Shown here: positions 16,917 to 57,970 of the stretch, one piece after another
Layout: every line of letters begins with the position of its first letter
How positions within the stretch are numbered: the stretch's first letter is position 1
IMG/VR virus record: IMGVR_UViG_3300031669_000001
Span: 186,001 to 250,000 of that record
Strand: one strand, 5' to 3'
DNA: 64,000 nt
Made by a program: the position numbers and the translations under genes
The notes under the pieces: model-generated
What the model was told of the DNA's origin: nothing
What the model saw: the letters and a program-made list of their open reading frames with translations, nothing else
The model's database searches: none

Positions 16917-16992
16917 TGGTCGCCCTGGAGGGATTCGAACCCTCGATCGCGATTTTAGAGATCGCAGCTTTACCGCTAAGCATTACAAGGCG
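16917..16992 (-). tRNA. amber suppressor tRNA (anticodon CTA)
   Basis: Acceptor CGCCTTG/CAGGGCG-A-CCA, anticodon arm GCGAT-CTCTAAA-ATCGC, T arm GAGGG-TTCGAAT-CCCTC. Confidence 0.88.
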
Positions 16993-17130
16993 TTTGGTTT
17001 AATTACAAGCTTCTAAATCTTTCCATTGACGACGAACTACTTGTCCTAAAAGAGCTTTACGAACGCGGCGCCGAGCTTTACGACCTGAGGCACCATGACC
17101 TAAATACATACGCTTAGAAACTGCTGACAT

Positions 17131-17334
17131 TTAAGCTCCTATCTCCATGCAATGTGCGTGATATTCTGCATCGCTGTTTTCAGCATCGTAAAGCCATGCG
17201 TGCTCTGCAGCTTGCTCAGCAGCTTGCAGACCCGGATCGCCTTCATCGAACCAATAATTTGCTTCATCTTCAGGAACACCTTTAGCTACCTCAGCCGCAA
17301 CGTAAGCTGCACGACCATCTTCATAATTAGCCAT
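17131..17334 (-). CDS. hypothetical acidic protein
   Basis: 67 aa ORF with SD. Confidence 0.6.
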   Translation of the reverse strand: MANYEDGRAAYVAAEVAKGVPEDEANYWFDEGDPGLQAAEQAAEHAWLYDAENSDAEYHAHCMEIGA

Positions 17335-17474
17335 TTTTCCTCCGAAGTTTTTCAGTGTATCGTTTCTCTTCTGCTTGAACTTTGCGAAGCCTTTTCAATC
17401 CAGGATCTATCGCTCTCATCTTTTTCATGATCTCAGCCTCGGCTTTTTTAGCCTTAACTGGATCATAGACGTGA

Positions 17475-17591
17475 TTAGTCAAAGTTCACGCTCTTGTTGC
17501 GCTTGAAGGATCCTTTTCCCTTCTTGGAGCGTACAATTTGAAGCTTGTACTTTGGTGTGCGGCAATCTTTGTGAACGATGGATGCTTTCAT
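17475..17591 (-). CDS. arfA: ArfA-like ribosome rescue peptide (38 aa; not in ORF track)
   Basis: MKASIVHKDCRTPKYKLQIVRSKKGKGSFKRNKSVNFD carries the KKGKGS(Y/F).R signature; SD and early promoter upstream. Confidence 0.75.
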   Translation of the reverse strand: MKASIVHKDCRTPKYKLQIVRSKKGKGSFKRNKSVNFD

Positions 17592-17616
17592 GATGTTTCC
17601 TTGATTTGATGGAGTA

Positions 17617-17646
17617 ATTATATCAAAGATTTATATGAAAGTAAAC
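17617..17646 (-). promoter_or_regulatory. T4-like early promoter (representative copy)
   Basis: GTTTACTTT...TGATATAAT; similar copies near 22380, 29490, 33380, 34517, 35483, 38780, 42392, 46893, 48410, 51518, 58134, 60831 (minus) and 49218 (plus). Confidence 0.8.
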
Positions 17647-17659
17647 TATTTTTGCACGT

Positions 17660-17938
17660 TTATCGCAAATAAACAGCGAAACTCGTTGCATCCTTCTTCA
17701 AACAGGTCGCTTTTCCGAGAAGCCCAGGTCTGCGAGTACCTCGATACTTGATGCTGATAGGAAGAATCTTGTTGATCTTTTTCATGACGTGCAGCATCTC
17801 AGGAGTAGCTGGAATCCCCTTCGCTATGGAAGATTCTGTGTTGGGGGATTTGTACAGGCACAGAGTAGCTAGCCCATTTGGTTCCAAGATGAACAAGGAA
17901 TTCGCTATCATCTTCTTGGATATCAGATCTACGTGCAT
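17660..17938 (-). CDS. hypothetical protein
   Basis: 92 aa ORF with SD. Confidence 0.6.
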   Translation of the reverse strand: MHVDLISKKMIANSLFILEPNGLATLCLYKSPNTESSIAKGIPATPEMLHVMKKINKILPISIKYRGTRRPGLLGKATCLKKDATSFAVYLR

Positions 17939-17939
17939 T

Positions 17940-18728
17940 TTATTCTCCTATAGTTGCAGTTTTTTTGAACATGAAAGTAGGGCTTATCGAGATCATGTCA
18001 GGCATGTCGATGAGCTTTACAGGTTTACGAGTTACCTTCTCTGAAGTCCTGTGCTTCTCTGGAATCTTTTCCAGCTCGTCAGTAGTCAGAGGACGAGTTT
18101 CTTCTACTCGCATGAAGTACGATCCTTTGCGGTAACAAGCATCGTATTCTTCCCAAGGATCACCAATATCACGAAGCATAGACTTCTTGATGTCACCATT
18201 GACGTTCTGCAGATCCTTGTGAGAGAAGTGAGACAGAGCTACCATCGTGATAGAATTTTTGATGGCATCCTTTTCTCTCCAGAGCAGGCAGAGATAAGCT
18301 TCGCGAATAGACGGAACTTGCCACACTCTTGCATCGAATATGGGAAGCCATTCCTTCTTAGACGGGAGATATTTTTCAAGATTTCTATTGAAGAACGCCG
18401 TAGCTGTTGCAGCTAGAACTGAACAGAGTTTTTGGTAACGTCCGTCAAACAGGTATTGAGAAGCGCTTGACTCAGGAAGATACCAGATCAGAGTTATCTC
18501 ATCTGATTGAGTGTAGCCTACGAGAGCGTTGGTTTCTTCTGTCAAGAAGCGAGTAGTTTCCTGCATCAGCTTTGTAAGATTCTCGTCGAAAGGTCGCTTC
18601 AGACCGCTTGTGAATGTGTGAAAAGCTCTTCCATCTAGCCGAGCTATCATCGGCATGCCTTTGGAGGCGCGCCGATCTGTTTCAACACCTTCAAGATTCT
18701 TCATGAGATCGCCTAAAGTATCAGCCAT
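17940..18728 (-). CDS. tRNA(His) guanylyltransferase Thg1-like
   Basis: RLDGRAFHTFT, YTQSDEI, FDGR.QK, FDARV, WRE.DA..NS; start set to MADTLG. Confidence 0.93.
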   Translation of the reverse strand: MADTLGDLMKNLEGVETDRRASKGMPMIARLDGRAFHTFTSGLKRPFDENLTKLMQETTRFLTEETNALVGYTQSDEITLIWYLPESSASQYLFDGRYQKLCSVLAATATAFFNRNLEKYLPSKKEWLPIFDARVWQVPSIREAYLCLLWREKDAIKNSITMVALSHFSHKDLQNVNGDIKKSMLRDIGDPWEEYDACYRKGSYFMRVEETRPLTTDELEKIPEKHRTSEKVTRKPVKLIDMPDMISISPTFMFKKTATIGE

Positions 18729-18818
18729 TTTGTAACACCTCGTTAACATTAGATGTTGAATTATAACATACTTTAGCCGACAAATAAATAGAAAGATTAA
18801 CTTTTTAAGGAATTTCTC

Positions 18819-19931
18819 ATGAAGAAAAACGTTAGGGCTCTTTTCATCCTCAAGAGGAGACAAGACTATAGCACTGATCTAGTGAACTTCACCAACTTTA
18901 CGGTGTCCACTGGAATGTATAACTCTGCGTCCTTCGTGAGCGATATGCTTAGCGAACACGGCGTCGAGTCAAAAGTAGTTGTGGTGATAGACAACAATGA
19001 CATCGATCGTGAAGTTAGAGATTTCAATCCAACTCACGTGTTTATAGAAGGCTACTGGGTAGTTCCAGAAAAATTTGACGTTCTCAAACCTCTTCATCCT
19101 TCTGTTACTTGGGTAATTCGTTGCCACAGTGAGCTTCCATTCTTAGCACAAGAAGGTATTGCAATTCAATGGACGTTTGATTATCTAGCAAGAGGTGTTA
19201 CTGTTTCTGGCAACAGTCCTCGTATCAACCGAGAGCTAAGAGTCATGGCGGCAGCTGTAGGTATAAGTCACGAAGTTATTGAAAGACAGATTCCTCTGCT
19301 CACAAACTTCTACCCTGTATCTGAGAATGTAGCTGTTCAACCTAGAATTGTTGGAGATACGATCAATGTTGGATGTTTTGGTTCACATCGTCCACTGAAG
19401 AATCATTTGATCCAAGCTCTAGCAGCTATCGAGTACGCAAATCAACGCGGCCTCAAGTTACGCTTTCACGTTAACTCTGGCCGCGTTGAGATGAATGGTA
19501 GCAATGGTTTGAAGAACTTGAAAGCTTTGTTCGCGAACATAAAAACCCACGAGCTGGTTGAACATCCATGGGCTTCTCATGAAGACTTCTTGGAAACAGT
19601 TCGCTCTATGGATCTTTGTCTTCAAGTTTCTTTCACAGAGACATTCAATATCGTCACTGCCGATGCAGTCAACTCTGGAGTTCCAGTCGTAGTGTCCGAC
19701 GAGATTCTCTGGGTTGAGGGACCATTTGCTGATCCTACCTCAACCACAGATATTGTCGAAACTATGAGTGAAGTGATGGCTAAACGTCATTACTTAATCG
19801 AGACTAATCGTCGCAACTTGAAAGCTTATTCCAAGCTAACTAAAAAGCATTGGATTGATTATCTCGAAGAAGTAAGTCCTCGTCACGGATTGAATCTTAT
19901 CATCCTAAACTTCAAGAACCTGTTCTTTTAG
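18819..19931 (+). CDS. glycosyltransferase (GT-B/GT4-like)
   Basis: R..KN, S..ETFNIV.ADA...GVPVV; late promoter ATAAATA upstream. Confidence 0.8.
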   Translation: MKKNVRALFILKRRQDYSTDLVNFTNFTVSTGMYNSASFVSDMLSEHGVESKVVVVIDNNDIDREVRDFNPTHVFIEGYWVVPEKFDVLKPLHPSVTWVIRCHSELPFLAQEGIAIQWTFDYLARGVTVSGNSPRINRELRVMAAAVGISHEVIERQIPLLTNFYPVSENVAVQPRIVGDTINVGCFGSHRPLKNHLIQALAAIEYANQRGLKLRFHVNSGRVEMNGSNGLKNLKALFANIKTHELVEHPWASHEDFLETVRSMDLCLQVSFTETFNIVTADAVNSGVPVVVSDEILWVEGPFADPTSTTDIVETMSEVMAKRHYLIETNRRNLKAYSKLTKKHWIDYLEEVSPRHGLNLIILNFKNLFF

Positions 19932-20443
19932 AACTTGTAACCCACGCCAGCGGTGAACACATCAGCATCGCCCCTGGCGTAGACCCTCAAGTCATTCCCA
20001 GAGTATAGAGCGTGCCACCAGCTAGCTTCGACATTCCAGTGATTCGTCACAGAATACTTGATAGAAGCTTTAGCCAGTAGGTCAGTTCGATACGTATCTT
20101 TGTAAGAGACTCCGTCAGTAGCAGTCACCGTAGTCGCTGTGAAGTAAGGTCCAATGGCAAAGGAAGTCCTTAACAGTGAGTTGAGAGCAAATTGGGCATC
20201 GATCATCGCGTAGATGCCATCACGCTTGTCAACACCTTGATGTCCTTCATTTAAGTAACCGAAGTCCCAACGGCCAAACTTTGTAGGTGTTTCTTGATAC
20301 ACACCCCAAGCGTTTGACTTTACGTCAGTTATAGAATTGGAAACTGCTCGGCCTCCAAAGACCCATAGAGTGGCAGTGTCAGCGCTTGCCACGGTTGTGA
20401 ACAACAATGATGCAACGAGCATCAACGATTGTAAAAATTTCAT
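19928..20443 (-). CDS. outer-membrane beta-barrel protein
   Basis: Signal peptide (ASA), alternating beta strands, C-terminal GVGYKF beta-signal. Confidence 0.75.
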   Translation of the reverse strand: MKFLQSLMLVASLLFTTVASADTATLWVFGGRAVSNSITDVKSNAWGVYQETPTKFGRWDFGYLNEGHQGVDKRDGIYAMIDAQFALNSLLRTSFAIGPYFTATTVTATDGVSYKDTYRTDLLAKASIKYSVTNHWNVEASWWHALYSGNDLRVYARGDADVFTAGVGYKF

Positions 20444-20485
20444 GTTACTAACTCCCCCGAATCAATTTTGAGGAAAACCCTCGTA

Positions 20486-21043
20486 CTACGCTTTTATCCA
20501 ACCCTTGTCTTCAAGGATTTGAATTATTTTGCCGGCACAATCACGACCAAATTTCATTCTTTGATAGCCTGTAGATCTTTCATCAAGCAGCTTCAAAATT
20601 TTATTGTCAAGCTCGATAGCTTCTTCTTTCGTTTGGCTTCTTCCAGTTGGATCATAAGACCTACCACGATCAATAAAGATGTCCAAGTTATCGTATTGAG
20701 CGTAAGCTTCATATACCACGCCCTTCAACGATTGCATCGGCCACTGTGGAGTGATGTACGCCAAGCTCATCAAGATTGGACTGTCTGTGATGACAAGTTC
20801 AACCTCATCTACAACGTTAGCTAGCCTAAAGTGCTGCTTGCCGAAGATGTATTCTTGCGCGCGAAACAGCTTGTTGCCACGCTTTTCCCAAGTAGCATCC
20901 TTTGCATACTCGAGAATTTCTTCTACTGATTTCTCCTGAAACTTCAGCTCAGCAAACGTTGCTGCTCTGATTGTGCTTTTACCAGCGCCAGGCCCACCGT
21001 ACAGATTGATCACTCTTGGTTTTTGAACGTATAGTCCTGTCAT
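20486..21043 (-). CDS. P-loop nucleotide kinase (NadR/AAA_28-like)
   Basis: GGPGAGKST, EYAKD, ITDSP, GR.Q. Confidence 0.8.
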   Translation of the reverse strand: MTGLYVQKPRVINLYGGPGAGKSTIRAATFAELKFQEKSVEEILEYAKDATWEKRGNKLFRAQEYIFGKQHFRLANVVDEVELVITDSPILMSLAYITPQWPMQSLKGVVYEAYAQYDNLDIFIDRGRSYDPTGRSQTKEEAIELDNKILKLLDERSTGYQRMKFGRDCAGKIIQILEDKGWIKA

Positions 21044-22374
21044 TCTTCTCTCTCATTCCATTTAGTTATTGCATCACCCATAACAAGACCAGTGTTGGAT
21101 CCAATCATGTAAGGTACTGATGGTCCTTGCGCTCCGCATTCACAAGTAACGTACACACGAACGGCAGGTTGACCATCGTAACCTATTCCAGTCGGTTGTT
21201 CACCACAGAACGGGCACAGTTCCAGTTGAGGATCACTCAACGCTTTCTTGACGGTAGCCTTCTTCGTATCATTTACAAAATCTTTGATTTCAGAAGGCTT
21301 CATGCCTTTGACAGCTTCTGTAAAGTCCAACTGTAACAAACGTGACACAGCGTGCTCCAATTGGATCAAAAATTTCTTCGAGCGCTTCATGTGAGTTTGA
21401 GTCATCGAGTTGATGAACTTTGAAACTTCTCTCAGCTTAACGCTCTTAACTTCTTCTCTGAACGAATTGACAACGTTGACGATCGGTTGTAGCAGAGGAT
21501 CTTCTTTGATCTTCAAGTCAGACTCGAACAATTCATTGATGAAGACACAGTTGTAGATCGCCTCGATGAACTTGCATTCACGAACGACATTAGTTGGAAC
21601 CCTAAAGGTTTCCAATTCTTTGTGAGTGAGATTTGTTACGTTCAAGCTCAAGAACATCTTCTGAACTGGAGTTAACGTAGATTCGATGTCATGCTCAAAT
21701 TCACTGAAATCGTGTTGACGATCCTTGACCAGACCACGTAGACGATTTACTTTATGTATCGCACCGATCTTCGACAAGAAATTCAAGCCTATGCTTGAAT
21801 GCTTCTCGGAAAATAATTTTTCCAATTCACCCCAGATGCGATCAGCAGACAGCGCGTCCAGTTCACCAGCGTTCACCAAATTTCTGCACAGCTCAATGGT
21901 GTCAGAGTGAATCAAGAAGCCGTAGCGAGCTGCGAAGCGAGCAACTCTCATGACGCGCAGAGGGTCTTCAGCGAACGCATCGCTGACGTGGCGGATGATA
22001 CCATTCTTCAGGTCTTCCATGCCGTTGAAAGGATCGATGTACTGATTGCCGTGACTCATTGCGATTGAATTTATCGTCAGATCACGACGAGACAGATCCT
22101 CTTCCAATGTAACGTCAGGGCTGAATTCAACTTCAAAGCCATGGTAGCCAGCAGCGACTTTCTTTTCGCGGCGAGCTAAAGCGTATTCTGAACCGTTTTC
22201 AGGGTGAAGGAAGACTGGAAAAGCGGCACCGACCTGCTTGTAACCTCGTTCAAGCATCCACTCAGGACTAGCACCGACTACAACGTAGTCGAAGTCCTTC
22301 GGAATGTTGCCGAGGATCAGGTCTCGAACGGCACCACCAACGAGATAAATTTGAGGATTCATTTCAGTTTTCAT
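21040..22374 (-). CDS. cca: tRNA nucleotidyltransferase (CCA-adding) with C-terminal CPFCG zinc-ribbon
   Basis: VGGAVRD, D.D, EEDL.RRDLTIN, EDPLR..R.ARF. Confidence 0.92.
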   Translation of the reverse strand: MKTEMNPQIYLVGGAVRDLILGNIPKDFDYVVVGASPEWMLERGYKQVGAAFPVFLHPENGSEYALARREKKVAAGYHGFEVEFSPDVTLEEDLSRRDLTINSIAMSHGNQYIDPFNGMEDLKNGIIRHVSDAFAEDPLRVMRVARFAARYGFLIHSDTIELCRNLVNAGELDALSADRIWGELEKLFSEKHSSIGLNFLSKIGAIHKVNRLRGLVKDRQHDFSEFEHDIESTLTPVQKMFLSLNVTNLTHKELETFRVPTNVVRECKFIEAIYNCVFINELFESDLKIKEDPLLQPIVNVVNSFREEVKSVKLREVSKFINSMTQTHMKRSKKFLIQLEHAVSRLLQLDFTEAVKGMKPSEIKDFVNDTKKATVKKALSDPQLELCPFCGEQPTGIGYDGQPAVRVYVTCECGAQGPSVPYMIGSNTGLVMGDAITKWNEREE

Positions 22375-26377: not shown

Positions 26378-26818
26378 TCAGGCCATATCGATAGCTGCGA
26401 TTATAGTGCGTTCAAGATCATGGAAGACAGGTACAGAGTATCTGTCAGCGAGCGCGTGTAGATACTTCATCTTTGGGGCATCTTTTGGATACCCTAATAC
26501 AACTCTTCCATCCTTTACGTAATGTCCAAACTCAATGTTTGTTGTCATCGCTGGCATCTTGTTGAGTTCACGAGGAACCCAAAAGACGATAGCAGTTGAC
26601 ACCTCAAGAGCCAACCACTCCCAGTTTACTTGAGCGTCGTATTCATAGCCGTCAGTGTAAACTCTATTTTCAGGAACGTAAACTGTGCCTTCAAAGTCAT
26701 GAAGCTCTAAAATTTTAAGAGCCTCGGGTCTCCATGATTCTGTTTTTGGGTCACGTGGTGTAGGACCTGCTAAGAAGATAGCAGGTGTGATTGACTCGCG
26801 AGCGTAAATGACATTCAT
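26378..26818 (-). CDS. nucleoside 2-deoxyribosyltransferase-like protein
   Basis: IFLAGP, W...A, Q..WE, FW.PR, T..EFG. Confidence 0.8.
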   Translation of the reverse strand: MNVIYARESITPAIFLAGPTPRDPKTESWRPEALKILELHDFEGTVYVPENRVYTDGYEYDAQVNWEWLALEVSTAIVFWVPRELNKMPAMTTNIEFGHYVKDGRVVLGYPKDAPKMKYLHALADRYSVPVFHDLERTIIAAIDMA

Positions 26819-26952
26819 GGTACACCTAGGCAGTTTTGAGCTACCGTCTTCCAATTGGGCTTACAAAATTATGCCAATTGAACGCTTTGACATTAAGCTA
26901 TAGGTGATTAGGTTTCCATTATATTACATCACTTTTAGAAAGTACAATTATT

Positions 26953-27630
26953 TTACATCCACATCTGTTCAAGCTTACCCTGACGAACATCTCTCAGACG
27001 CATCTTGACTTCACTGCGGTGATCTGTAACTTGATCGTCACGTTCTCTGTAAGTTCTAACCTTATCTCCACGCATTCCAGAGCCTCGATCTTCCTTACGC
27101 TTCTTGTCGAGAGCTTCATACTTTTGAGCGTCGTAGAATCTCTTCACTCGAGTTTCAAGCATCTCGCGCGCTGTCTTCTTGTTGTTGTACTGGCTTTTTG
27201 TAGAAGCTTTAGCCTCTATCCCAGTTGGAAGGTGACGCATGATCACGCAACTTTCAGTCTTGTTGCGGTGTTGACCACCTGGACCAGTATCTTTCGTTGT
27301 GAACATCAAGATGTCTTTCTCGTTGAGACTCCATTCACTTTCTTCAGGCACAACCATGGCCACTACTGTTACCGTTGAAGTGTGAACTCTACCTTTTCGT
27401 TCTGTTGGAGGGATTCTTTGCCACCGATGACCACCGCTTTCTTGCAGTAGCCTATTGACGAGATTGTCCGGCCCGTCGACCGTTAGATTGATTCAACCGT
27501 GCTCGGTTTCAACCTCAACGCCAGCACGAACGCGCTCGGCGAACTTACAATAGATCGCAGCTTGATCGCTGACGAGCAACTTTGCATCTTCTCCACCTTC
27601 ACCAGGTCGGATTTCCAATAACACTTTCAC
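26953..27630 (-). CDS. RF1-type peptide chain release factor lacking domain 1, with in-frame TGA at codon 46 (27493-27495)
   Basis: SD AAGGAG + GTG start; LEIRPGEGGEDA...EHG*...ESGGHRWQRIPPTERKGRVHTST...GPGGQHRNKTES...RGDKVRTY all in one frame. Confidence 0.88.
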
Positions 27631-38277: not shown

Positions 38278-38772
38278 CTATTTCTTTCTTGATACCTTCT
38301 TAACTCCACCGTCTGTGAAGATCAACTTGTGACCTTTTGCAAGGTTACAAGGTTGACACATAGTCTGCATATTGTCAACAGAGTTTGCTCCACCGTGATA
38401 CTTAGGCAGACGATGATCTGCATTCATCAAGATTTCCTTGCCATCTTCGTTGATGGCGTAGAGATTCATGATGACAGGTTTTCCAGGCTCAGCATCGTTA
38501 ATTTCAACAGCGAAGAATGAGCCTTCAATTCCACAACAACGACACTTTGTACCGTGAATCAAGAAAGTTCTCAGCTTGACGTTGTGAACGTTGATCAAGG
38601 TGTTGAACGCTTCCATCTCAACAGAAGGTGAGCTGCTATGAGGGAGTGAATCAATTTCTTTCATCGCGTCCAAGACACCGTCAACAGACAGGATTCCTAA
38701 CCGACGAAAGTTACGATGCTTCGCGACTAAAAAGTCGTCCATGAAAGAAGAGATTTTTGATATGTTCAACAT
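38278..38772 (-). CDS. HNH endonuclease family protein
   Basis: CxCC, DH..P...GG.N...N.Q..C..CN..K; start uncertain. Confidence 0.8.
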   Translation of the reverse strand: MLNISKISSFMDDFLVAKHRNFRRLGILSVDGVLDAMKEIDSLPHSSSPSVEMEAFNTLINVHNVKLRTFLIHGTKCRCCGIEGSFFAVEINDAEPGKPVIMNLYAINEDGKEILMNADHRLPKYHGGANSVDNMQTMCQPCNLAKGHKLIFTDGGVKKVSRKK

Positions 38773-38881
38773 TTGAGTAATTATATCACTGTTCATGTTG
38801 AAAGTAAACACAATTTGGTAGTACTCCACGGTTACGATCCGTGCCGTTGCAGCCCATCTGACCACTCTCCAGAGGATATGT

Positions 38882-38981
38882 TGGTAGTCCCGCTCGGACT
38901 CGAACCGAGAATGTGCGCTAATCTGGCGCCACAGAGTGCCACTTTATAAGGGTGGTGTTTTACCAATTAAACTACAGGACC
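38882..38981 (-). tRNA. tRNA-Ile(TAT) with long variable arm
   Basis: GGTCCTG/CGGGACT, loop CTTATAA, CCA. Confidence 0.8.
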
Positions 38982-39634
38982 AGTAATTCTATAAATTCTT
39001 CATTGATTAAGTCATTTGAAAGAACAACCACTTTGATGTTGTTCATTTTCATTGCAGATTTAATCTTTCGTTCATCTTTCTTGATCAGATAATCATTTTT
39101 TGGATCAAGAAAGATGTTTTGTTTTGGTAAATAAAAGTCTGGTATATATCTTCGTTTCTTACCGTTATCGTTCCAAATATATCCTTGTCGAACTTTAATC
39201 CACTCAATATTAAGTGAGTCTAAAATTTCAGCAACTCTAACCTCGTATGAAGACTCCAAAATTACTCCAGGCTTATACTCGACGTTCTTAGAATACTTTG
39301 AATGTTTTGTTAACCGTTTGCAAGCAATGATTGAAAGTTTTTCCTTCGTTTCTTCACAATGTGGATGGGAAAATATATAACCCTCTTTTTCCATTTGCCT
39401 TTTTCTTTCATTTCCCCTTGCGCCTGCTATTCTTTGCTGTTCTGGATTATGAGATCTACTTTTATGACCAGCGCATCCTTGAGATGACGAAAATTCCTTA
39501 GAGCAAATTTCACATACCCATTTTGTTTTCTTCTCTACTTGTCCCTTACATACAGCAACATGCTTGTTAAAATTAGGAACACTAATTTGCCGAGAACATT
39601 TAGGGCAATCTTTTTTCTGTTTAGAACCGTGCAT
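38972..39634 (-). CDS. putative homing endonuclease (C2H2 zinc fingers + PD-(D/E)xK)
   Basis: CPKC..H...C, CEIC...H....H, SSYE, YIPDF, DPKNDY. Confidence 0.75.
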   Translation of the reverse strand: MHGSKQKKDCPKCSRQISVPNFNKHVAVCKGQVEKKTKWVCEICSKEFSSSQGCAGHKSRSHNPEQQRIAGARGNERKRQMEKEGYIFSHPHCEETKEKLSIIACKRLTKHSKYSKNVEYKPGVILESSYEVRVAEILDSLNIEWIKVRQGYIWNDNGKKRRYIPDFYLPKQNIFLDPKNDYLIKKDERKIKSAMKMNNIKVVVLSNDLINEEFIELLVL

Positions 39635-41630: not shown

Positions 41631-41704
41631 TGGTAGTCCCGGTCGGAATCGAACCGACGTGTTTCGCTAATCGGGCGAACACCTTACCATTAGATGACAG
41701 GACT
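41631..41704 (-). tRNA. tRNA-Ile(GAT), C33/U37
   Basis: Loop CCGATTA, CCA. Confidence 0.75.
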
Positions 41705-41716
41705 ACAACGATTGAA

Positions 41717-41787
41717 CGACATACGGGGAATCGAACCCGCGATCTCCGGCGTGAAGGCCAGGGTTTTGTCCGTTAAACTACACATCT
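41717..41787 (-). tRNA. Glu-like tRNA with a 6-nt anticodon loop (CTTCAC), no CCA
   Basis: D and T arms intact; stem CTGGC/GCCGG. Confidence 0.5.
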
Positions 41788-41870
41788 CAGATCTTTTTTC
41801 AAAACTTGCTGGAATCGATTAAAATCTGTCAATCGTGATCATATCCACGGCAGCAACCGCTTCAATAATT

Positions 41871-43499: not shown

Positions 43500-43591
43500 G
43501 GGTGGGACTGGTGGGATTCGAACCCACGATGTGAGCTTTCGCATGTACCGGATTAAAAGTCCGGTGTCTTCAACCTCTTGACTACAGACCC
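43500..43591 (-). tRNA. tRNA-Lys(TTT) with long variable arm
   Basis: Loop CTTTTAA, about 20-nt variable region. Confidence 0.78.
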
Positions 43592-43681
43592 ATTAAACAG
43601 CTTTGGAATCAGAGGTTGATTTACCAAAGCCATGGGTAGAAAATCGTTCCATGGCACATACTCCTTTTGTTGAAATTAAAT

Positions 43682-43756
43682 TGGTCCGCCCACGTGGAAT
43701 CGAACCACGGACCGGAGTTTAGAAGACTCCTGTTATATCCACTTAACTATGGGCAG
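43682..43756 (-). tRNA. tRNA-Arg(TCT)
   Basis: Loop CTTCTAA, CCA; 5' end overlaps the endonuclease stop codon. Confidence 0.88.
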
Positions 43757-44379
43757 AAACATTTTCTTCCTTTTGACCACCCTTGATCTAGGTAAGTCTG
43801 AAGAATATCTTTCTTGATCTTGATGGTTTTCTGTTGCTTTTCTGAGAAGATCCAGCAAGATCCAAATTGAGAGTTTCTATCACCGGATTGAGCAGATCTC
43901 ATTTTAGCTTTCGTATCTTCAGAGTGAGTCTTTCCGAACATCGGATTAGAGTCTGCTGAATTCAAATCGCTTAATTTTGCTCTTGATTCATATGAATGAG
44001 ATTTCCCTTGGAATTTTCCCTTGCCCATATTTGATTTTCTTGCAGCATTACTTGCATTGGACTCTATGCAGAACCCATTTCTTCTAATCTTTGTGATGTA
44101 TTCAAATCCACCGGTGCCGCCTCTTCTGAGGTTGTAGACATCATCACGAGAAAGAAACTCATCACTAACAATTTCTTTCTCCCTCGCATACATAGCTTCC
44201 GAATTCTCGAAAGTCTCAAGTATGACTTTTTCAAAGTTTTCGATCCCGTATCTTTTGATAGCACGACCGATAACTTTTCCAGAGCCCATGTACCCATCAT
44301 CAAAATTCTTGGTCTTATGAACTCCAACGTAGATTTTTCCATTCACCATGTTGGTGATTTGATAGATGCAATATTTCAT
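43747..44379 (-). CDS. GIY-YIG homing endonuclease (Seg-like) with NUMOD3 repeats
   Basis: CIY.ITN..NGKIYVG, YMGSG, YNL..GG.GG, GK.HS repeats. Confidence 0.9.
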   Translation of the reverse strand: MKYCIYQITNMVNGKIYVGVHKTKNFDDGYMGSGKVIGRAIKRYGIENFEKVILETFENSEAMYAREKEIVSDEFLSRDDVYNLRRGGTGGFEYITKIRRNGFCIESNASNAARKSNMGKGKFQGKSHSYESRAKLSDLNSADSNPMFGKTHSEDTKAKMRSAQSGDRNSQFGSCWIFSEKQQKTIKIKKDILQTYLDQGWSKGRKCFCP

Positions 44380-45131: not shown

Positions 45132-45206
45132 TGGTACACCTGCAGGGAATCGAACCCTGTATTCCAGCTTGAAGGGCTGGCCACTCAACCAATTGTATTC
45201 AGGTGT
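45132..45206 (-). tRNA. tRNA-Glu(TTC), C33
   Basis: Loop CCTTCAA, CCA. Confidence 0.8.
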
Positions 45207-45209
45207 GCA

Positions 45210-45284
45210 AGGCTCCCCAGGCTGGATTCGAACCAACGACCAAGTGATTAACAGTCACCTACTCTACCACTGAGCTACTAGGGA
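45210..45284 (-). tRNA. tRNA-Asn(GTT)
   Basis: Loop CTGTTAA; overlaps the endonuclease stop codon. Confidence 0.88.
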
Positions 45285-45880
45285 ATTGTTACAAAATCTT
45301 TTGCTATTTGAATCCACTGTTTTGGATCTTTGTACATCTTTTGCCATTCTATTCTAAGTACTTTCCATCCAAAATCTTTCAAAAATTTATCTTTTCGTTC
45401 ATCACGTTCTCGATATTCTTGAAATCGTTTGTGTTGTTCACCGTCGATCTCAATGCAGAGACTTTTATGAACCCAGGCAAAGTCAAGAGAGAAGTTGCCT
45501 AAGGAATATTCGCGAACATAATTTTTATCTTCAAACTCGTTTTCGATAACTTTCATGAAAAACTTTTCTGGATAACTTGGCATGTTGTTCCACCGAGATT
45601 TACCAATATTCCAAGCTCGTCCTTCAGAATGAGCTTTCTTCATTGATTCGCTTGTTAGCTGTTTAGTTTTGGAAGAAGGAATATGACCAGGTTTTCCCTT
45701 AAGTGCGATAGAAATTTTATTGGACATCTTCCAGATTCTTGGATCAGATTTATTCAAACCTTTAGTCCAAGAATCTTTACCAGCAAAGGGTTTATGATCT
45801 TTACCAGAACCGTGTGTTCTCCAAATATGAGTTCCAATACCCATTTTAGAAAATTCTTTATCGCAAAATGTACATTTCAT
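45278..45880 (-). CDS. putative homing endonuclease (zinc finger + DUF559/Vsr-like domain)
   Basis: CxxC..H....H, S.PE, DFAW, IEIDG.QH, RD..KD, GW.VLR; start set to MKCTFC. Confidence 0.8.
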   Translation of the reverse strand: MKCTFCDKEFSKMGIGTHIWRTHGSGKDHKPFAGKDSWTKGLNKSDPRIWKMSNKISIALKGKPGHIPSSKTKQLTSESMKKAHSEGRAWNIGKSRWNNMPSYPEKFFMKVIENEFEDKNYVREYSLGNFSLDFAWVHKSLCIEIDGEQHKRFQEYRERDERKDKFLKDFGWKVLRIEWQKMYKDPKQWIQIAKDFVTIP

Positions 45881-45917
45881 GTTGAATTGTAACACAGTTG
45901 AGAAAATAAGAACATTA

Positions 45918-46011
45918 TGGCTCCCCCAGCAGGATTCGAACCTGCATACCGTTCGCGACGGACTACGAGTGGTTAACAGCCACTTCACTTGCCAGTTATG
46001 TGTACGGGGGA
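45918..46011 (-). tRNA. tRNA-Asn(GTT) with long variable arm
   Basis: Loop CTGTTAA, variable hairpin CCGT/ACGG, CCA. Confidence 0.8.
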
Positions 46012-46016
46012 ATGTT

Positions 46017-46091
46017 TGGCGGTGTTCAGAGGAGTTGAACCTCAATCAAAAGGCCTCGGTGGCCTCCGTGCTAACGTTACACTAAAACACC
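46017..46091 (-). tRNA. tRNA-Arg(CCG), A33
   Basis: Loop CACCGAG, CCA. Confidence 0.65.
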
Positions 46092-52319: not shown

Positions 52320-52329
52320 TTTGTTCTCC

Positions 52330-54227: not shown

Positions 54228-54568
54228 ATAAACTAGAGATGAGGGCAGATTATGCTCTTACCAAGCCTTTCGGCCGTCTTCCCTTTCGGGGTCGACATGG
54301 TAGCTTGAATTAACCATCCTCAAGCTTAGGACCACCTAACCGCACATGATCGGACATGCGCAACCAGCATGTTAAGCACCTAGTTTAGTCCAGGCTACGA
54401 CCCAGTTTATCGTCTGGGAACTATTCTGTGATCACCACAGACAGTGGGTAAACTATTTTCACACTCTTGCTTGGTTAGGTCGAGTGCTATCTTAAAGTTG
54501 CCCTTAAGAAGTAGTTCCATCAGCTTCACAAGTTGTCGAAGTATCACAATCTAATGCAGCTAGTTTAT
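54228..54568 (-). ncRNA. Y-RNA-like handle family, copy 4 (about 280-nt structured payload)
   Basis: ATAAACTA-GCTGCATTAGATTGT-GATACTTCG...ATAATCT-GCCCTCATCTC-TAGTTTAT. Confidence 0.7.
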
Positions 54569-54640
54569 CGGTAGCAGCAGGTGGAGTCGAACCACCGGAG
54601 ATAGGCTTATGAGACCTATTTGAATCCCATTCTCACTGCA
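54569..54640 (-). tRNA. tRNA(CAT), miniature D arm
   Basis: Loop CTCATAA, T arm intact. Confidence 0.6.
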
Positions 54641-54641
54641 A

Positions 54642-54766
54642 CATTGATGAGAAAAAGTTGATAGAGGCTTTTTGTGGCGGCTGTCCTACCACTGGACGAC
54701 TAGTCAGGAATCGAACCTGAGTTCGCTGCTTTGGGCGAAGTAACTCTTATCTACGCAACATCAATG
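54642..54766 (-). ncRNA. Y-RNA-like handle family, copy 5 (T arm then D arm)
   Basis: CATTGAT-GTTGCGTAG...GTTACTTCG, TCAGG-TTCGATT-CCTGA, GTCC-AGTGGTA-GGAC, TTTTTCTC-ATCAATG. Confidence 0.78.
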
Positions 54767-54916
54767 GTGCCATACAATCAGAGTCAACCAACTGCATGAC
54801 ATTTCAGCATTTTACCGGAGCTACCCGGCTTTCCTTCGAGGATCTTTAATACCGCCCTTTCGGGTGATGGTACAAGAATTGCTGAACCCCTAGTGGAAGT
54901 GCCCTTCCACACCGTT

Positions 54917-54990
54917 TGGAGCGGGTAGAGGGAATCGAACCCTCCACTGAACCTTGGCAAGGTTCCGAGTTACCACTACACCACACCCGC
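54917..54990 (-). tRNA. tRNA-Gly(GCC)
   Basis: Loop TTGCCAA, CCA. Confidence 0.88.
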
Positions 54991-55105
54991 TAGATGAACA
55001 TTCAAAGAATGTCATCCGTCTCCACCATCTAATGATCAGCTCCACTAGAAGAGTTACCACCTAAGGTACCATCCAATGATCGGCTCCATTGGAAGAGTTA
55101 TAAGT

Positions 55106-55236
55106 TGAATCGAGAAAGAGGCGAAAAGAGAGATTTTAGGGTTTTGCCATTAAACTATACCCACTAGGGGCAGCCGGAATCGAACCGACGTCACTCGTTT
55201 AAGAGACGAAGTAACTCTTTTCTGTGCAACGATTCA
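55106..55236 (-). ncRNA. Y-RNA-like handle family, copy 6 (T-acceptor-D module)
   Basis: GTCGG-TTCGATT-CCGGC, TGCCC/GGGTA, TA, GTTT-AATGGCA-AAAC inside the handle. Confidence 0.8.
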
Positions 55237-55311
55237 GGTGCGGGATGAGAGAATCGAACTCTACTATTCCTGGGTGGAAGCCAGGCGTGTAACCAATGAC
55301 ACCTATCACGC
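55236..55311 (-). tRNA. tRNA-Gly(TCC)
   Basis: Loop CTTCCAC. Confidence 0.75.
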
Positions 55312-55316
55312 AAAGG

Positions 55317-55402
55317 GATGGAGAAAAAGTCGGTAAGGGAGACTGGCCGAAGCCAAGGTTAACAAAAAGTAAACGAAGTAGCCCTAATCCTATGCAACCA
55401 TC
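55317..55402 (-). ncRNA. Y-RNA-like handle family, copy 7
   Basis: GATG-GTTGCATAG...GCTACTTCG...TTTTTCTC-CATC. Confidence 0.72.
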
Positions 55403-55403
55403 T

Positions 55404-55477
55404 TGGAGCGGGTGAAGAGAATCGAACTCTCGTCATAAGTTTGGAAAACTTCAGCTCTACCATTGAGCTACACCCGC
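55404..55477 (-). tRNA. tRNA-Gly(TCC)
   Basis: Loop TTTCCAA, CCA. Confidence 0.88.
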
Positions 55478-55579
55478 GTTGCTTTACTGCAATTTCAGCC
55501 ATAATAACATAACTTTCTGAGAAAGTACAATATTATTTGCAGCGGTAATTATTTATGACTGGGCAATTTTTATGAAAAG

Positions 55580-56167
55580 TTAAGTTTTTCTACTTGTATT
55601 CGCATTCATAATCCATTGATAGTTGAAGTCAAAGTCATCTTGATCTCCGACTGTAGCCATCTCTCCACTAGGAAGAAACTTCCCGATAACGAGAACATCA
55701 CCAGCATCTACCTTGTTCAAGAGACGGTACAGTCTCTTGTTTGCGCCAGACGCATTAGCGTAATCACCTTCAACCTGACCATAAAGGTCGGCATTATACT
55801 TTTCAGAGATGAATTTTGCAACAGCTGCAGAACGACTTACCCCTGCATGACAATGAACTATAACCCGCTCACACGTTATCCTATTCAAAAAATCTATGAT
55901 TGCTTTTGCATGATTTGCATCAGGCAGGCGTAGGTTGTGCCACAGAACTGGACCATCAGGGTCAGCGTCAGGGACGGCACCCAAAGGTTCATGAATAGTT
56001 TCTTCTTCCAGATCATCAAAGCTCAGCCTTAGGATCGAGAAAAAGCCATCATTTATCAAGGCTTTAGGATCTCCAGGGGAAGTAATTGAGATTATAGCGG
56101 TGTCAGAGCGTACAACTTCTCGATGTTCCATCCAACGCTGACTAACGAATTTAACGGTTTTGATCAT
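55580..56167 (-). CDS. protein tyrosine/dual-specificity phosphatase family
   Basis: VHCHAGVSRS (CX5R), F.D. Confidence 0.88.
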   Translation of the reverse strand: MIKTVKFVSQRWMEHREVVRSDTAIISITSPGDPKALINDGFFSILRLSFDDLEEETIHEPLGAVPDADPDGPVLWHNLRLPDANHAKAIIDFLNRITCERVIVHCHAGVSRSAAVAKFISEKYNADLYGQVEGDYANASGANKRLYRLLNKVDAGDVLVIGKFLPSGEMATVGDQDDFDFNYQWIMNANTSRKT

Positions 56168-56290
56168 AAGGCATTGTAACACAAACAATCAAGAAAGTAA
56201 AATAAACTTAGGAGAGGTGTTATCCTCTCCTAATATGGTACTATGTCTAAGAGGCTTCAGGCTACCCGTGAGCATCCTGAAGCACGTAGA

Positions 56291-56650
56291 TCACTCGTAG
56301 TTGATCTTGCTGATTCTATCCTTCACGTCTGCAACGTCGAGTCCAGAGAGTTCGATGAGTTTCTTCTCCATCGAGCTGTCCTTTCTATTGTACCAGAACA
56401 GTAAAGAACTGGCAGCTGCTTCAAGACCTTGCCATTTCCTGCCGCCGTTTGCGAGCTTGTTCTTATTTGTGATTGGAGAGAACGCTCCTTTCTTGGGATC
56501 ACGACCGAGAATGAGATCGTGAAGTAAGAAAAATCGAGAGTCGAGCTTTGCATTATCCTTGGTGATGCTCTTCCAGTAAGCGAAGTACTCAGACATATCG
56601 CGACGAGCTTCGATTTCGGTGGCTGGTTTTTCCATAGTCATTGTTTCCAT
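56291..56650 (-). CDS. hypothetical protein
   Basis: SD; FSPITN.NKL.NG motif. Confidence 0.7.
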   Translation of the reverse strand: METMTMEKPATEIEARRDMSEYFAYWKSITKDNAKLDSRFFLLHDLILGRDPKKGAFSPITNKNKLANGGRKWQGLEAAASSLLFWYNRKDSSMEKKLIELSGLDVADVKDRISKINYE

Positions 56651-56662
56651 TTTGATTCTCCT

Positions 56663-57115
56663 TTAAAATTTAAGTTGTGAGAGTGCAGAAGATACTTTTT
56701 CTTGCACGTGTTTTGATATTGCCTGGTTACTGTAAGTGCTTACTTCACGCTTGATGCTACTTTCAAGGTAATGCTTTTGAAGTTCAACTGCTTCTGTAGC
56801 AGCTTTCCTAACCAATTGAGAAAATTCTCGAGCAATAAGATCTTTCACTGACTGTTTGATCTCATCACTTATTGCATTGTTAAGCGTGAATTTTGAGTTC
56901 CACCCACCAGAATGTGAGCCATACTTTTTCGCAAGATTTAATTTCTCGGCATTTGCGGCAGTTTGAACTGCAAGTTGGATTTCAGAATCGACGCCTTTGA
57001 CGTACCGTTGTGCTATGTTTGCTATCACAGCGCCTTGAACCTGAATCAAAAATTCAGGATCTTTCTCGATGATAGAGGCGAGGGCGTTTGTATCTAAGCT
57101 GATTTTGACTGTCAT
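56663..57115 (-). CDS. hypothetical protein
   Basis: SD, helical. Confidence 0.7.
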   Translation of the reverse strand: MTVKISLDTNALASIIEKDPEFLIQVQGAVIANIAQRYVKGVDSEIQLAVQTAANAEKLNLAKKYGSHSGGWNSKFTLNNAISDEIKQSVKDLIAREFSQLVRKAATEAVELQKHYLESSIKREVSTYSNQAISKHVQEKVSSALSQLKF

Positions 57116-57116
57116 G

Positions 57117-57596
57117 TTATTCTCCTTTGGTTTGAAAATCGTCTGTTAAGTTGCAAGATTGCGGGTGAAGACAATGACCTACATCGCTACAGCATTCACA
57201 GACTGTTAGCTCATCGATTTGGTCTTGTAAAAATTTCTTGCGATTGTCTATGTCTGCAAGTTCAGCTTTAAAATTTGCAAGCTTCTCTTTTCGTTCTTCA
57301 CGTTCCTCTTCAGCTTTTTTCAGCTGTTTTTCAAGAGCGTAACGTTCGTTGATAAGTCTGATGATCTCTGTTTCGCGAGGATGACTGCGAATGATCGTGC
57401 AACCATCAGAATGCTCGATCAAGTTGATGTCTTTGATCTCAAATCCATCTCCAAATTCTTCAGCACTTCGCATATCATCGAGACAATCAGTGATGAGAGC
57501 TTCCTCAGTGTCATAACGTCTCTTGATTTCCCACGATTGACCGCAGCAAGAACAACGATAGCCGTTGTCACCACGAGCTATTAGCTGTATGCTCAT
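57117..57596 (-). CDS. hypothetical protein
   Basis: SD, Cys motifs, coiled coil. Confidence 0.7.
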   Translation of the reverse strand: MSIQLIARGDNGYRCSCCGQSWEIKRRYDTEEALITDCLDDMRSAEEFGDGFEIKDINLIEHSDGCTIIRSHPRETEIIRLINERYALEKQLKKAEEEREERKEKLANFKAELADIDNRKKFLQDQIDELTVCECCSDVGHCLHPQSCNLTDDFQTKGE

Positions 57597-57970
57597 TTTG
57601 ATTCTCCTTTAGTTGATTTGAAAAGACGATACTTTTTGAAGTGATGACGATGCTCTTGTGTAATCGGGAGAGTCGCAAGGGCTGTGTGGCTTGGGGAATA
57701 GCCAAGGTTATCGTCAGGCTCGTAGAAGAGCGCGCAGTCGATACCTAAGGTAGTTACGTGTTGGTAAGCTTTGAGAAGGTGTTCTTCGCTGTTAGCTTCG
57801 AGAAGAACGAGTGAAGTTGTCTCGTCAAACGTTGTGCCGGCGTGGCCAGCCTTGAGACCTGCTTCGAATGTTGCGTGAGCCGCCTGAACGATCTGCTGTT
57901 CGAGGGGTAGATCCTTGCGGATGAAGGTGTAGCAGTACGACTTTGGTTGAACCTACAGAGCTGCTTTCAT
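57593..57970 (-). CDS. Pth2-like peptidyl-tRNA hydrolase with in-frame TAG at codon 6 (57953-57955); not in ORF track
   Basis: MKAAL*VQPKSYCYTFIRKDLPLEQQIVQAAHA...LVLLEA.SEE.L...FYEPD...TALAT.P...FKKYRLF; alternative in-frame start at 58102. Confidence 0.75.

What the first reader, a model, noticed from the sequence alone, without database searches (positions are those of the whole stretch)
16917..57970. Candidate stop-codon-gated translation-rescue circuit (opal-gated RF, amber-gated Pth, amber tRNA, mini-ArfA)
Seen: both genes that hydrolyse peptidyl-tRNA have one early in-frame stop with intact motifs downstream (RF1-type factor: TGA; Pth2-like: TAG). The same genome encodes a CUA tRNA and an ArfA-like peptide. 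Other genes use TAA, TGA and occasionally TAG as ordinary stops, so this is not global recoding. Established: RF1 reads UAA/UAG, RF2 reads UAA/UGA, ArfA recruits RF2, and prfB uses an internal UGA as an RF2 sensor. Inference: the phage senses termination capacity through readthrough. Low or sequestered RF2 would switch on the phage RF1-type factor. Low RF1 or amber tRNA expression would switch on Pth. The phage RF would then close the amber gate again. This would counter host defences that attack translation.
Basis: partly seen in the sequence, partly recalled or inferred. Interest (0 to 1): 0.92.

Follow-up and report, generated by a model that had tools for sequence, protein, structure and literature searches.

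The report
Stop-codon-gated phage release factor and Pth2
A huge soil phage carries a shortened RF1-type release factor gene interrupted by an early UGA and a Pth2-like hydrolase gene interrupted by an early UAG; both interruptions are kept across many distant phages, so they look like deliberate translational switches rather than broken genes, a feature I found no paper describing.

Summary
They are an RF1-type factor lacking domain 1 (26953-27630, minus strand) with TGA at codon 46, a Pth2-fold gene (57593-57970, minus) with TAG at codon 6, a tRNA(CUA) (16917-16992, minus), and a 38-aa ArfA-like peptide (17475-17591, minus). The genome uses the standard code.

The main new result is comparative.
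- **RF gate:** All 80 nearest IMG/VR relatives of the RF carry exactly one early in-frame stop: 79 TGA and 1 TAG. In the distant clade the TGA replaces the conserved Trp codon of RF1. One relative instead has a canonical prfB-type cassette (GAGGT-AGT-CTT-TGA-C, +1 frameshift).
- **Selection:** dN/dS is 0.12-0.25 on both sides of the stop.
- **Pth2 gate:** The Pth2-like family has TAG at codons 3-6 in 5 of 7 lineages, never TGA or TAA.

So both gates are real, selected and codon-specific. The RF gate most likely makes synthesis depend inversely on host RF2 activity, through Trp readthrough. The Pth2 gate most likely needs the phage amber suppressor.

The mini-ArfA belongs to a widespread phage peptide family that is not linked to the RF in other phages. 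Searchable papers report no recoding in RF1-type genes.

The parts
26953..27630 (-). Domain-1-less RF1-type class I release factor gene (225 codons including the gate), with PPT and GGQ motifs
27493..27495 (-). In-frame TGA gate, codon 46, context GGT TGA A
   Evidence: same place in L002/L008, L003/L012 and L009-L011
57593..57970 (-). Pth2-fold (PTRHD1/Pth2-like) gene starting at ATG 57970
57953..57955 (-). In-frame TAG gate, codon 6 from ATG 57970; it is also the stop of an upstream in-frame 49-codon ORF
57956..58102 (-). Upstream in-frame 49-codon ORF that ends at the TAG. It is absent in relative L006/L091, so it is not needed for the gate.
16917..16992 (-). tRNA with anticodon CUA (amber suppressor candidate). 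It has C1-G72, A73, an encoded CCA, and an unusual 4-nt connector before the D stem (read by eye).
17475..17591 (-). 38-aa ArfA-like peptide (mini-ArfA) with a TAA stop
17617..17645 (-). Sigma-70-like promoter match (TTTACT-17-TATAAT, TG extended) upstream of the mini-ArfA. Downstream on the same strand lie three small ORFs, the tRNA(CUA) and the 2H/Macro gene.
   Evidence: a consensus match only
26818..26907 (-). tRNA-like element directly after the RF gene, with a long anticodon arm. Its CCA overlaps the ATG of the next gene.

Best explanation
The window holds two independent, evolutionarily maintained stop-codon gates in a standard-code huge phage from soil.

(1) RF gate. The phage encodes a class I release factor of RF1 specificity that lacks domain 1. 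Its mRNA carries an early UGA, a codon the factor itself should not read. Full-length protein is made only when a ribosome reads through that UGA. In the larger clade the UGA sits on the conserved Trp codon, so the inserted residue is most likely Trp from near-cognate tRNA-Trp. One lineage instead shifts +1 on CUU UGA C, exactly as in prfB. Host RF2 is the factor that terminates at UGA, so output of the phage factor should rise when RF2 activity falls. This is cross-regulation, not the autoregulation of prfB.

(2) Pth2 gate. A Pth2-fold protein has UAG at codons 3-6. Its synthesis needs amber suppression, and the phage's own tRNA(CUA) is the natural candidate. UAG is read by RF1-type factors, so output should fall when RF1 activity is high; that includes the phage factor.

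Shown: the anatomy, the conservation, the codon specificity, purifying selection on both sides, and the standard code. Inferred: Trp insertion, RF2 sensing, decoding by tRNA(CUA), and any coupling between the two gates or with the mini-ArfA.
For: RF gate:
- 80 of 80 nearest IMG/VR relatives carry one early in-frame stop (79 TGA, 1 TAG), at two different positions in two clades.
- Three Al-Shayeb huge phages at 34-38% identity have one or two early TGAs.
- Among the best 120 protein clusters, 104 are fragments called after the stop. The tested full-length ones translate only with TGA=W or TAG=Q, and one is truly ungated.
- The clade-2 TGA aligns with the W of the KGW motif in solved RF1.
- L004/L014 has GAGGT-AGT-CTT-TGA-C with the downstream frame at +1.
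- dN/dS is 0.15-0.25 before the stop and 0.12-0.23 after it; for window versus L008 it is 0.12 and 0.06.
- The base after the stop is never T in 77 unique genes.
- Flanks of the relatives are 83-88% open under code 11, with no special gain if TGA is read as sense.

Pth2 gate:
- TAG sits at codons 3-6 in the window, L091, L092, L093 and L095. All five early stops are TAG although TAG is the rarest stop, and each is followed by A or G.
- L093 has a second in-frame TAG inside the domain.
- dN/dS is 0.12.
- Fold search gives Pth2 and PTRHD1 with TM 0.65-0.76.

Other: a tRNA(CUA) is present in the window, and only these two genes in the window are gated.
Against: - No expression, mass-spectrometry or ribosome-profiling data exist for any of these genes.
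- No conserved RNA structure follows the UGA, so readthrough may be only basal leak. The gate could then be a fixed attenuator rather than a sensor.
- An opal suppressor tRNA elsewhere in the 345-kb genome cannot be excluded, because only 64 kb were read.
- The tRNA(CUA) has an atypical connector and an unknown amino acid identity. Its presence in the contigs of the TAG-gated Pth2 relatives could not be checked.
- In 4 of 5 cases the TAG is followed by ATT, which leaves room for reinitiation at AUU.
- The Pth2-like protein has Gln where Pth2 has the Lys of its GKGK motif.
Confidence: 0.6

Rival explanations
1. Fixed attenuators. The stops only hold two potentially toxic peptidyl-tRNA hydrolases at about 1% of the expression their mRNAs would otherwise give. 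They do not sense RF levels.
For: No conserved stimulatory RNA structure follows the UGA. RF overexpression is harmful in bacteria (PMC12421855). UGA is known to be the leakiest stop (own knowledge).
Against: A weak ribosome-binding site would do the same job, yet both genes keep strong Shine-Dalgarno sequences. Codon choice is strict: UGA for the RF1-type gene and UAG for the Pth2-like gene. One lineage swapped readthrough for the RF2-titrated prfB cassette. Any stop read by a titratable factor is a sensor to some degree.
Confidence: 0.2
2. Suppressor-tRNA timer, as in recoded phages (Borges et al.). Both gates are opened at a set time by phage suppressor tRNAs: CUA for the Pth2-like gene, and an unseen UCA tRNA or an overexpressed phage tRNA-Trp for the RF. 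Host RF levels play no part.
For: A tRNA(CUA) is in the window. Suppressor tRNAs are common in related phage contigs, including a UUA tRNA next to an ungated Pth2 homologue. tRNA-Trp genes lie near the RF in L011. L093 has two TAGs in one gene.
Against: No UCA tRNA is found among the 45 tRNAs of the window. The odd 6-nt-loop tRNA at 41716-41789 fails the Rfam threshold. The prfB-type variant needs no suppressor. The published 'code change modules' are themselves written in standard code.
Confidence: 0.25
3. The Pth2-like gene is not read through. A 2-5 codon mini-ORF ends at the TAG and ribosomes reinitiate at the next codon (ATT; GTT in the window).
For: ATT follows the TAG in 4 of 5 lineages. 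The mini-ORFs are very short and have good Shine-Dalgarno sequences.
Against: All five stops are TAG, the rarest stop. The window has GTT, which is not a known start. L093 has a second TAG inside the domain. A purine after UAG is the classical context for efficient amber suppression (own knowledge).
Confidence: 0.12
4. The genes are pseudogenes, or the stops are assembly errors or signs of a different genetic code.
For: None beyond the presence of the stops.
Against: The source run covers the site at 193x with no variant. The stops recur in 80 or more independent assemblies. dN/dS is well below 1 on both sides. Stop usage and ORF structure fit the standard code.
Confidence: 0.02

Closest known systems
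prfB (RF2) programmed +1 frameshift autoregulation
   Same: Both have an early in-frame UGA inside a class I release factor gene, so output depends on RF2 activity at that codon. Relative L004/L014 carries the full cassette: an SD-like GAGGT six nucleotides before the stop, then CTT TGA C (motif as described in PMC12421855).
   Different: The gene is RF1-type (PPT, Gln/Thr recognition residues) and lacks domain 1, so it should not read its own gate; this is cross-regulation rather than autoregulation. In 78 of 80 cases the frame continues in phase, which means readthrough, not frameshift. The site lies in domain 2, not at codon 26 of domain 1. PMC12421855 reports no programmed recoding for bacterial prfA.
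Phage 'code change modules' (suppressor tRNA plus RF plus aaRS) of stop-codon-recoded phages (Borges et al., 10.1101/2021.08.26.457843)
   Same: Both involve a phage-encoded suppressor tRNA and release factor, with in-frame stops used to delay or condition expression.
   Different: Here the genome is not recoded; only two genes in 64 kb are gated. The RF gene itself carries the stop, whereas the published modules are said to be encoded in standard code. An RF1-type factor sits beside an amber suppressor, the opposite of the published pairing.
ArfA-RF2 ribosome rescue
   Same: The 38-aa peptide aligns with ArfA residues 20-42, including KKGKGS(Y/F)xR. It is about the size of the active truncated ArfA.
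   Different: It lacks the first 10 or so residues, scores below the Pfam cut-off, and has an ordinary TAA stop instead of a non-stop mRNA. It belongs to a large phage family (consensus NPIAKEVRTPKYKxRVVKxKKGKGSFKR) that is not linked to the phage RF.
Pth2 / PTRHD1 peptidyl-tRNA hydrolases
   Same: The fold matches (TM 0.65-0.76, probability 1.0) and the R-x-D-L ... Q-x-x-H-A motif is shared.
   Different: The Lys of the GKGK motif is an invariant Gln. The protein scores below the NCBIfam Pth2 cut-off (18.6 against 126), and its activity is unknown.
Plant eRF1 readthrough autoregulation (PMC5397192)
   Same: In both, release factor expression is controlled by readthrough of a stop codon in its own mRNA (abstract).
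   Different: The plant case is eukaryotic, coupled to NMD and autoregulatory. Here the system is bacterial or viral and cross-regulatory.

Membership tests
Bacterial class I release factor RF1 (prfA) | GGQ catalytic motif | tested here: met
   GPGGQHRNK is present and invariant in relatives.
Bacterial class I release factor RF1 (prfA) | PxT tripeptide with the flanking Gln and Thr that give UAA/UAG specificity | tested here: met
   The sequence is QRIPPTERKGRVHTS. NCBIfam prfA scores 193 bits against 110 for prfB. Solved RF1 structures are the best PDB matches.
Bacterial class I release factor RF1 (prfA) | N-terminal domain 1 (about 105 residues) | tested here: not met
   The match covers model positions 105-334 of 347. 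Only 0-49 open codons lie upstream in 80 loci.
Bacterial class I release factor RF1 (prfA) | Equivalog score cut-off | tested here: not met
   193 bits against a cut-off of 400.
Bacterial class I release factor RF1 (prfA) | Peptide release at UAA/UAG but not at UGA | not testable with these tools
   Needs an in vitro release assay.
prfB-type programmed recoding | Conserved early in-frame UGA in the RF gene | tested here: met
   79 of 80 relatives have TGA.
prfB-type programmed recoding | CUU UGA C shift site with an SD-like element six nucleotides upstream and the downstream frame at +1 | tested here: not met
   The window has GGT TGA A and the frame continues in phase. The feature is met only in L004/L014.
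prfB-type programmed recoding | The product reads its own gate codon (autoregulation) | not testable with these tools
   The sequence predicts RF1 specificity, so probably not. The exceptions with a TAG gate are L013 and P0043.
Pth2 peptidyl-tRNA hydrolase | Pfam PTH2 gathering score | tested here: met
   26.6 bits against 23.
Pth2 peptidyl-tRNA hydrolase | Pth2 fold | tested here: met
   Model pLDDT is 82. Foldseek finds 15 Pth2 chains at probability 1.0.
Pth2 peptidyl-tRNA hydrolase | Conserved Lys of the GKGK motif and the acidic residue of the DAG motif | tested here: inconclusive
   Lys aligns with an invariant Gln (QQIVQAAHA). An invariant EPD stands in the second motif. The NCBIfam Pth2 score is 18.6 against 126.
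ArfA | Pfam ArfA gathering score | tested here: not met
   22.2 bits against 25.5, E 9.4e-5.
ArfA | C-terminal KGKGS motif and the preceding strand | tested here: met
   Residues 10-32 align with ArfA 20-42. 81 of 100 Atlas hits are ArfA clusters.
ArfA | Recruits RF2 to non-stop ribosomes | not testable with these tools
   The complex prediction with the phage RF gave no answer.
Amber suppressor tRNA | Cloverleaf with a CUA anticodon in a 7-nt loop, a canonical T loop and a CCA end | tested here: met
   ARAGORN and Rfam at 44 bits.
Amber suppressor tRNA | Is charged and decodes UAG | not testable with these tools
   The amino acid identity is unknown. It is no more than 72% identical to any tRNA in the window. 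Its C1-G72/A73 differs from the G1-C72/G73 of other phage CUA tRNAs.
Stop-codon-recoded phage (code 4 or 15) | Many genes with in-frame TGA or TAG, and low coding density under code 11 | tested here: not met

The most novel reading that the evidence does not exclude
A large, previously unrecognised family of phage-encoded, domain-1-less RF1-type release factors is switched on by failure of RF2-dependent termination at a conserved UGA (by Trp readthrough, or by a prfB-like +1 shift). In this phage it also forms a two-node termination-state circuit with an amber-gated Pth2-like hydrolase and a phage amber suppressor. The circuit would let the phage rebalance termination and ribosome rescue during infection or under translation-targeting defence.
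Probability: 0.3. Interest if true: 0.9.

Novelty: new variant of a known kind. Interest (0 to 1): 0.82.

Why it matters
Recoding that controls a release factor is a textbook case known only for prfB (RF2). A 2025 survey of 12,753 bacterial genomes found none for RF1 (PMC12421855). Here an RF1-type gene family, found in hundreds of phage contigs from soil, sediment and water, keeps an early UGA. It has reached this state at least three ways: two readthrough positions and one prfB-type frameshift.

This gives a natural, testable system for cross-talk between the two termination pathways. It also explains why gene callers split or mis-code these genes; some database entries exist only under TGA=W. 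And it shows that single-gene stop-codon gates exist in standard-code phages, a possible first step toward the genome-wide recoding seen in other phages.

The amber-gated Pth2-like family and the widespread phage mini-ArfA family add two more phage-encoded players in ribosome rescue that I found no paper describing.

Tried and rejected
- **Cultured relatives:** megablast of the RF region against cultured phages found nothing. tblastn there found only bacterial-type RFs and metagenomic huge phages.
- **Codon-usage scan:** a crude scan for in-frame stops was too noisy. A start-less downstream frame test replaced it.
- **Summed ORF length:** comparing this under alternative codes was uninformative, because removing any stop inflates it. 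Open-frame coverage replaced it.
- **tRNA(CUA) co-occurrence:** A specific pattern found ten contigs, none of them a Pth2 or RF relative. So co-occurrence of the amber tRNA with the TAG gate remains untested.
- **Odd tRNA at 41716-41789:** its 6-nt loop CUUCAC could read as UCA. It fails the Rfam threshold, has a defective T arm by eye, and matches no Glu tRNA closely, so I rejected it as an opal suppressor for lack of support.
- **Complex prediction:** the job with the two RF halves and the mini-ArfA gave no answer and is not evidence either way.
- **RNA structure:** consensus folding found no conserved structure 3' of the UGA. A local fold around the gate was not significant (z -1.0).
- **Selenocysteine:** rejected, because there is no downstream structure and the codon aligns with Trp.


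Full report
**What the window is**

The 64-kb window is part of a 345-kb viral contig, IMGVR_UViG_3300031669_000001. It comes from a soil metagenome, where it is covered at about 193x. Nearly all genes lie on the minus strand. ARAGORN finds 42 tRNA genes and Rfam adds three more plus one tRNA-like element. The window also encodes:
- a family B DNA polymerase
- a UvrD-type helicase
- a CCA-adding enzyme
- a Thg1-like enzyme
- a 2H-phosphoesterase/Macro protein
- ClpP
- an NAD kinase
- homing endonucleases inside the tRNA cluster

There is no close cultured relative.

**Check of the observation**

*Release factor.* The gene runs from 27630 to 26953 on the minus strand. It starts at a GTG behind AAGGAG and has TGA at codon 46 (27495-27493). 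After the stop it continues in the same frame through QRIPPTERKGRVHTS and GPGGQHRNK to a TAA. Pfam PCRF and RF-1 match on both sides of the stop. NCBIfam gives 193 bits to prfA and 110 to prfB, matching model positions 105-334 of 347. It is therefore an RF1-type factor without domain 1.

*Pth2-like gene.* It starts at ATG 57970 behind AAGGAAG, reads MKAAL, then TAG (57955-57953), then 119 codons with no possible start.

*The other two parts.* The tRNA(CUA) lies at 16917-16992. A 38-aa peptide with KKGKGSFKR lies at 17475-17591.

*Genetic code.* Minus-strand ORFs of 90 aa or more end in TAA 40 times, TGA 22 times and TAG 10 times. Reading TAG or TGA as sense does not lengthen the long ORFs. A search for stops followed by long start-less open frames finds only these two genes in the window. 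I read the stops as W or Q only to run searches; the genome uses the standard code.

**The RF gate is a family trait**

A profile scan of IMG/VR found 419 relatives, and the best 80 loci were kept. Every one has exactly one early in-frame stop: 79 TGA and one TAG.
- In the window's clade (52-81% identity) the stop is at codon 45-47, between two strands of domain 2.
- In the distant clade (40-45% identity) it is at codon 36. There it aligns with the tryptophan of the conserved KGW motif of solved RF1 structures.
- One relative (L004 = L014, 62% identity) has GAGGT AGT CTT TGA C at the same place, and the protein continues in the +1 frame. That is the prfB cassette as described in PMC12421855: an SD-like element six nucleotides before the stop, a CTT codon, then TGA.
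- Three huge phages from Al-Shayeb et al. (34-38% identity) have one or two TGAs in the first 55 codons.

The 5.8-billion-protein collection tells the same story. Of the best 120 clusters, 104 are C-terminal fragments that begin after the stop. Of the 16 full-length ones, 12 have W at the gate. The two I looked up translate only with TGA=W, one only with TAG=Q, and one is truly uninterrupted.

None of the 80 loci has room for a domain 1 upstream.

*Selection.* dN/dS is 0.15-0.25 before the stop and 0.12-0.23 after it. For the window against its 81% relative it is 0.12 and 0.06.

*Code in the relatives.* Their flanks are 83-88% open under code 11 and gain nothing special from reading TGA as sense.

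*Context.* The base after the stop is A 46 times, G 21 times, C 10 times and never T. I found no conserved RNA structure after the stop.

**The Pth2 gate**

Seven distinct lineages of the Pth2-like protein were recovered. Five have TAG at codons 3-6:

| Lineage | Reading at the gate |
|---|---|
| window | MKAAL-TAG |
| L091 | ML-TAG |
| L092 | MKMA-TAG |
| L093 | MKMS-TAG |
| L095 | MS-TAG |

Two lineages have no stop. All five stops are TAG, the rarest stop in this genome (10 of 72), and a purine follows each. L093 has a second TAG inside the conserved domain, which argues for decoding rather than reinitiation. dN/dS between the window and L091 is 0.12.

An AlphaFold model (pLDDT 82) matches archaeal Pth2, human Bit1/PTRH2 and PTRHD1 with TM 0.65-0.76 at probability 1.0. 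A profile alignment places an invariant Gln where Pth2 has the Lys of its GKGK motif. The fold is therefore certain, but the activity is not.

**The amber tRNA and the mini-ArfA**

*tRNA(CUA).* It folds as a cloverleaf with a canonical T loop and an encoded CCA. It resembles no other tRNA of the window closely. It differs from other phage CUA tRNAs in having C1-G72 and A73, and by eye it has four nucleotides before the D stem. Its amino acid is unknown.

*Mini-ArfA.* It aligns with E. coli ArfA residues 20-42 and scores just under the Pfam cut-off. In the ESM Atlas it falls among ArfA clusters of 38-40 aa. It has a sigma-70-like promoter match and a TAA stop. It lies on the same strand 480 nt upstream of the tRNA(CUA), with three small ORFs between them.

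A motif scan shows that such peptides (33-82 aa, consensus NPIAKEVRTPKYKxRVVKxKKGKGSFKR) occur in at least 120 viral contigs. None of those 935 kb of loci holds the RF or the Pth2-like gene. The mini-ArfA is thus a widespread phage family in its own right. Only its position in this genome ties it to the gates. A complex prediction with the RF gave no answer.

**How it most likely works**

*Shown:* two conserved, codon-specific gates, selected on both sides, in a standard-code genome.

*Inferred for the RF:* UGA is terminated by RF2, and the phage factor by its motifs should not read UGA. Full-length factor should therefore be made in inverse proportion to RF2 activity. Trp would be inserted by near-cognate tRNA-Trp; the codon replaces TGG in the larger clade. 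The prfB-type variant, whose mechanism is known to be titrated by RF2, supports this reading. A few lineages with a TAG gate (L013, P0043) would be autoregulatory instead.

*Inferred for the Pth2-like gene:* synthesis needs amber suppression, most simply by the phage tRNA(CUA). RF1-type activity, including the phage factor, opposes it.

*Possible link:* 40 of 72 phage genes here end in TAA. An extra RF1-type factor made when RF2 is scarce, for instance when RF2 is drawn to stalled ribosomes by ArfA-type peptides, would keep termination going. This link, and any role against host defences, is speculation.

**Comparison with what is known**

The closest system is prfB autoregulation, but this gene is RF1-type and would be cross-regulated. 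It mostly uses readthrough, the site is different, and the gene is viral. A 2025 survey found no programmed recoding in bacterial prfA and never TAG in the prfB motif. Borges et al. describe phage RFs and suppressor tRNAs as code-change modules written in standard code. Al-Shayeb et al. list RF1 and RF2 in huge phages without mentioning interruptions. My searches found no paper on in-frame stops in phage RF genes or on phage ArfA. A review of RF evolution does not mention phages. I rate this a new variant of a known kind.

**Verdict**

The gates are real and very likely regulatory. The four-part circuit is not shown.

Noticed in passing
window 26818-26907 (-); L002 about 3720-3810: A tRNA-like element (Rfam tRNA, 39.6 bits) lies 46 nt after the RF stop. 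It has a 7-8 bp anticodon stem and a loop of 12-15 nt. Its CCA end overlaps the ATG (26818) of the next gene, a nucleoside deoxyribosyltransferase-like protein. The 81% relative has an element at the same place with the same acceptor arm but a short anticodon arm (loop AUUCCA). It could be a processing signal or a non-decoding tRNA mimic.
   Followed up: partly
window 41716-41789 (-): ARAGORN calls a tRNA with a 6-nt anticodon loop CUUCAC. This reads as UCA if counted from U33, or as a Glu UUC loop minus one U. The T arm is irregular, it fails the Rfam gathering score, and it is not close to the window's Glu tRNAs.
   Followed up: partly
window 45135-45206, 41634-41704, 38885-38981, 43500-43592, 45918-46011 (all -): Rfam finds three tRNAs that ARAGORN missed. 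By eye two have C at position 33 (loops CCUUCAA and CCGAUUA). Several tRNAs are 93-97 nt long because of inserted stretches. Such anticodon-loop oddities may matter for escape from anticodon nucleases.
   Followed up: no
window 38278-38865, 43747-44379, 45278-46045 (-): HNH, GIY-YIG/NUMOD3 and DUF559 homing-type endonuclease genes sit between tRNA genes, and all three end in TAG. Adding the unannotated ORF 38972-39634, at least four of the ten TAG-terminated ORFs of the window lie in the tRNA cluster.
   Followed up: partly
window 15885-16901, 17940-18863, 21040-22374 (-): Around the tRNA(CUA) and mini-ArfA lie a 2H-phosphoesterase/Macro fusion, a Thg1-like tRNA-His guanylyltransferase, and a CCA-adding enzyme fused to a Lar-like domain. 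Together they look like a tRNA repair neighbourhood.
   Followed up: no
window about 27480-27600 (-), against L008: Third-codon-position identity between the window and its 81% relative is 0.80-0.90 over codons 11-50 of the RF gene, upstream of and across the gate. It falls to 0.14-0.6 further on. dS is 0.48 before the stop against 2.8 after it. This could be an RNA-level signal or a recent recombination. No significant fold was found.
   Followed up: partly
L094 261-336; L224 3874-4325: A tRNA with anticodon UUA (ochre suppressor type) lies 1.1 kb upstream of an ungated Pth2-like homologue. Another phage contig has a tmRNA 2 kb from its tRNA(CUA).
   Followed up: no
L230-L308 and L122 (IMG/VR contigs): Peptides of 33-82 aa with the consensus NPIAKEVRTPKYKxRVVKxKKGKGSFKR occur in at least 120 viral contigs, and the scan was saturated. 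This is a large phage ArfA-like family that I found no paper describing.
   Followed up: partly
P0001, P0010, P0043: Public protein collections hold 'full-length' versions of the gated RF that exist only because gene callers chose TGA=W or TAG=Q on short contigs. On longer contigs the same genes are called as C-terminal fragments. Automatic annotation has hidden the gate.
   Followed up: yes
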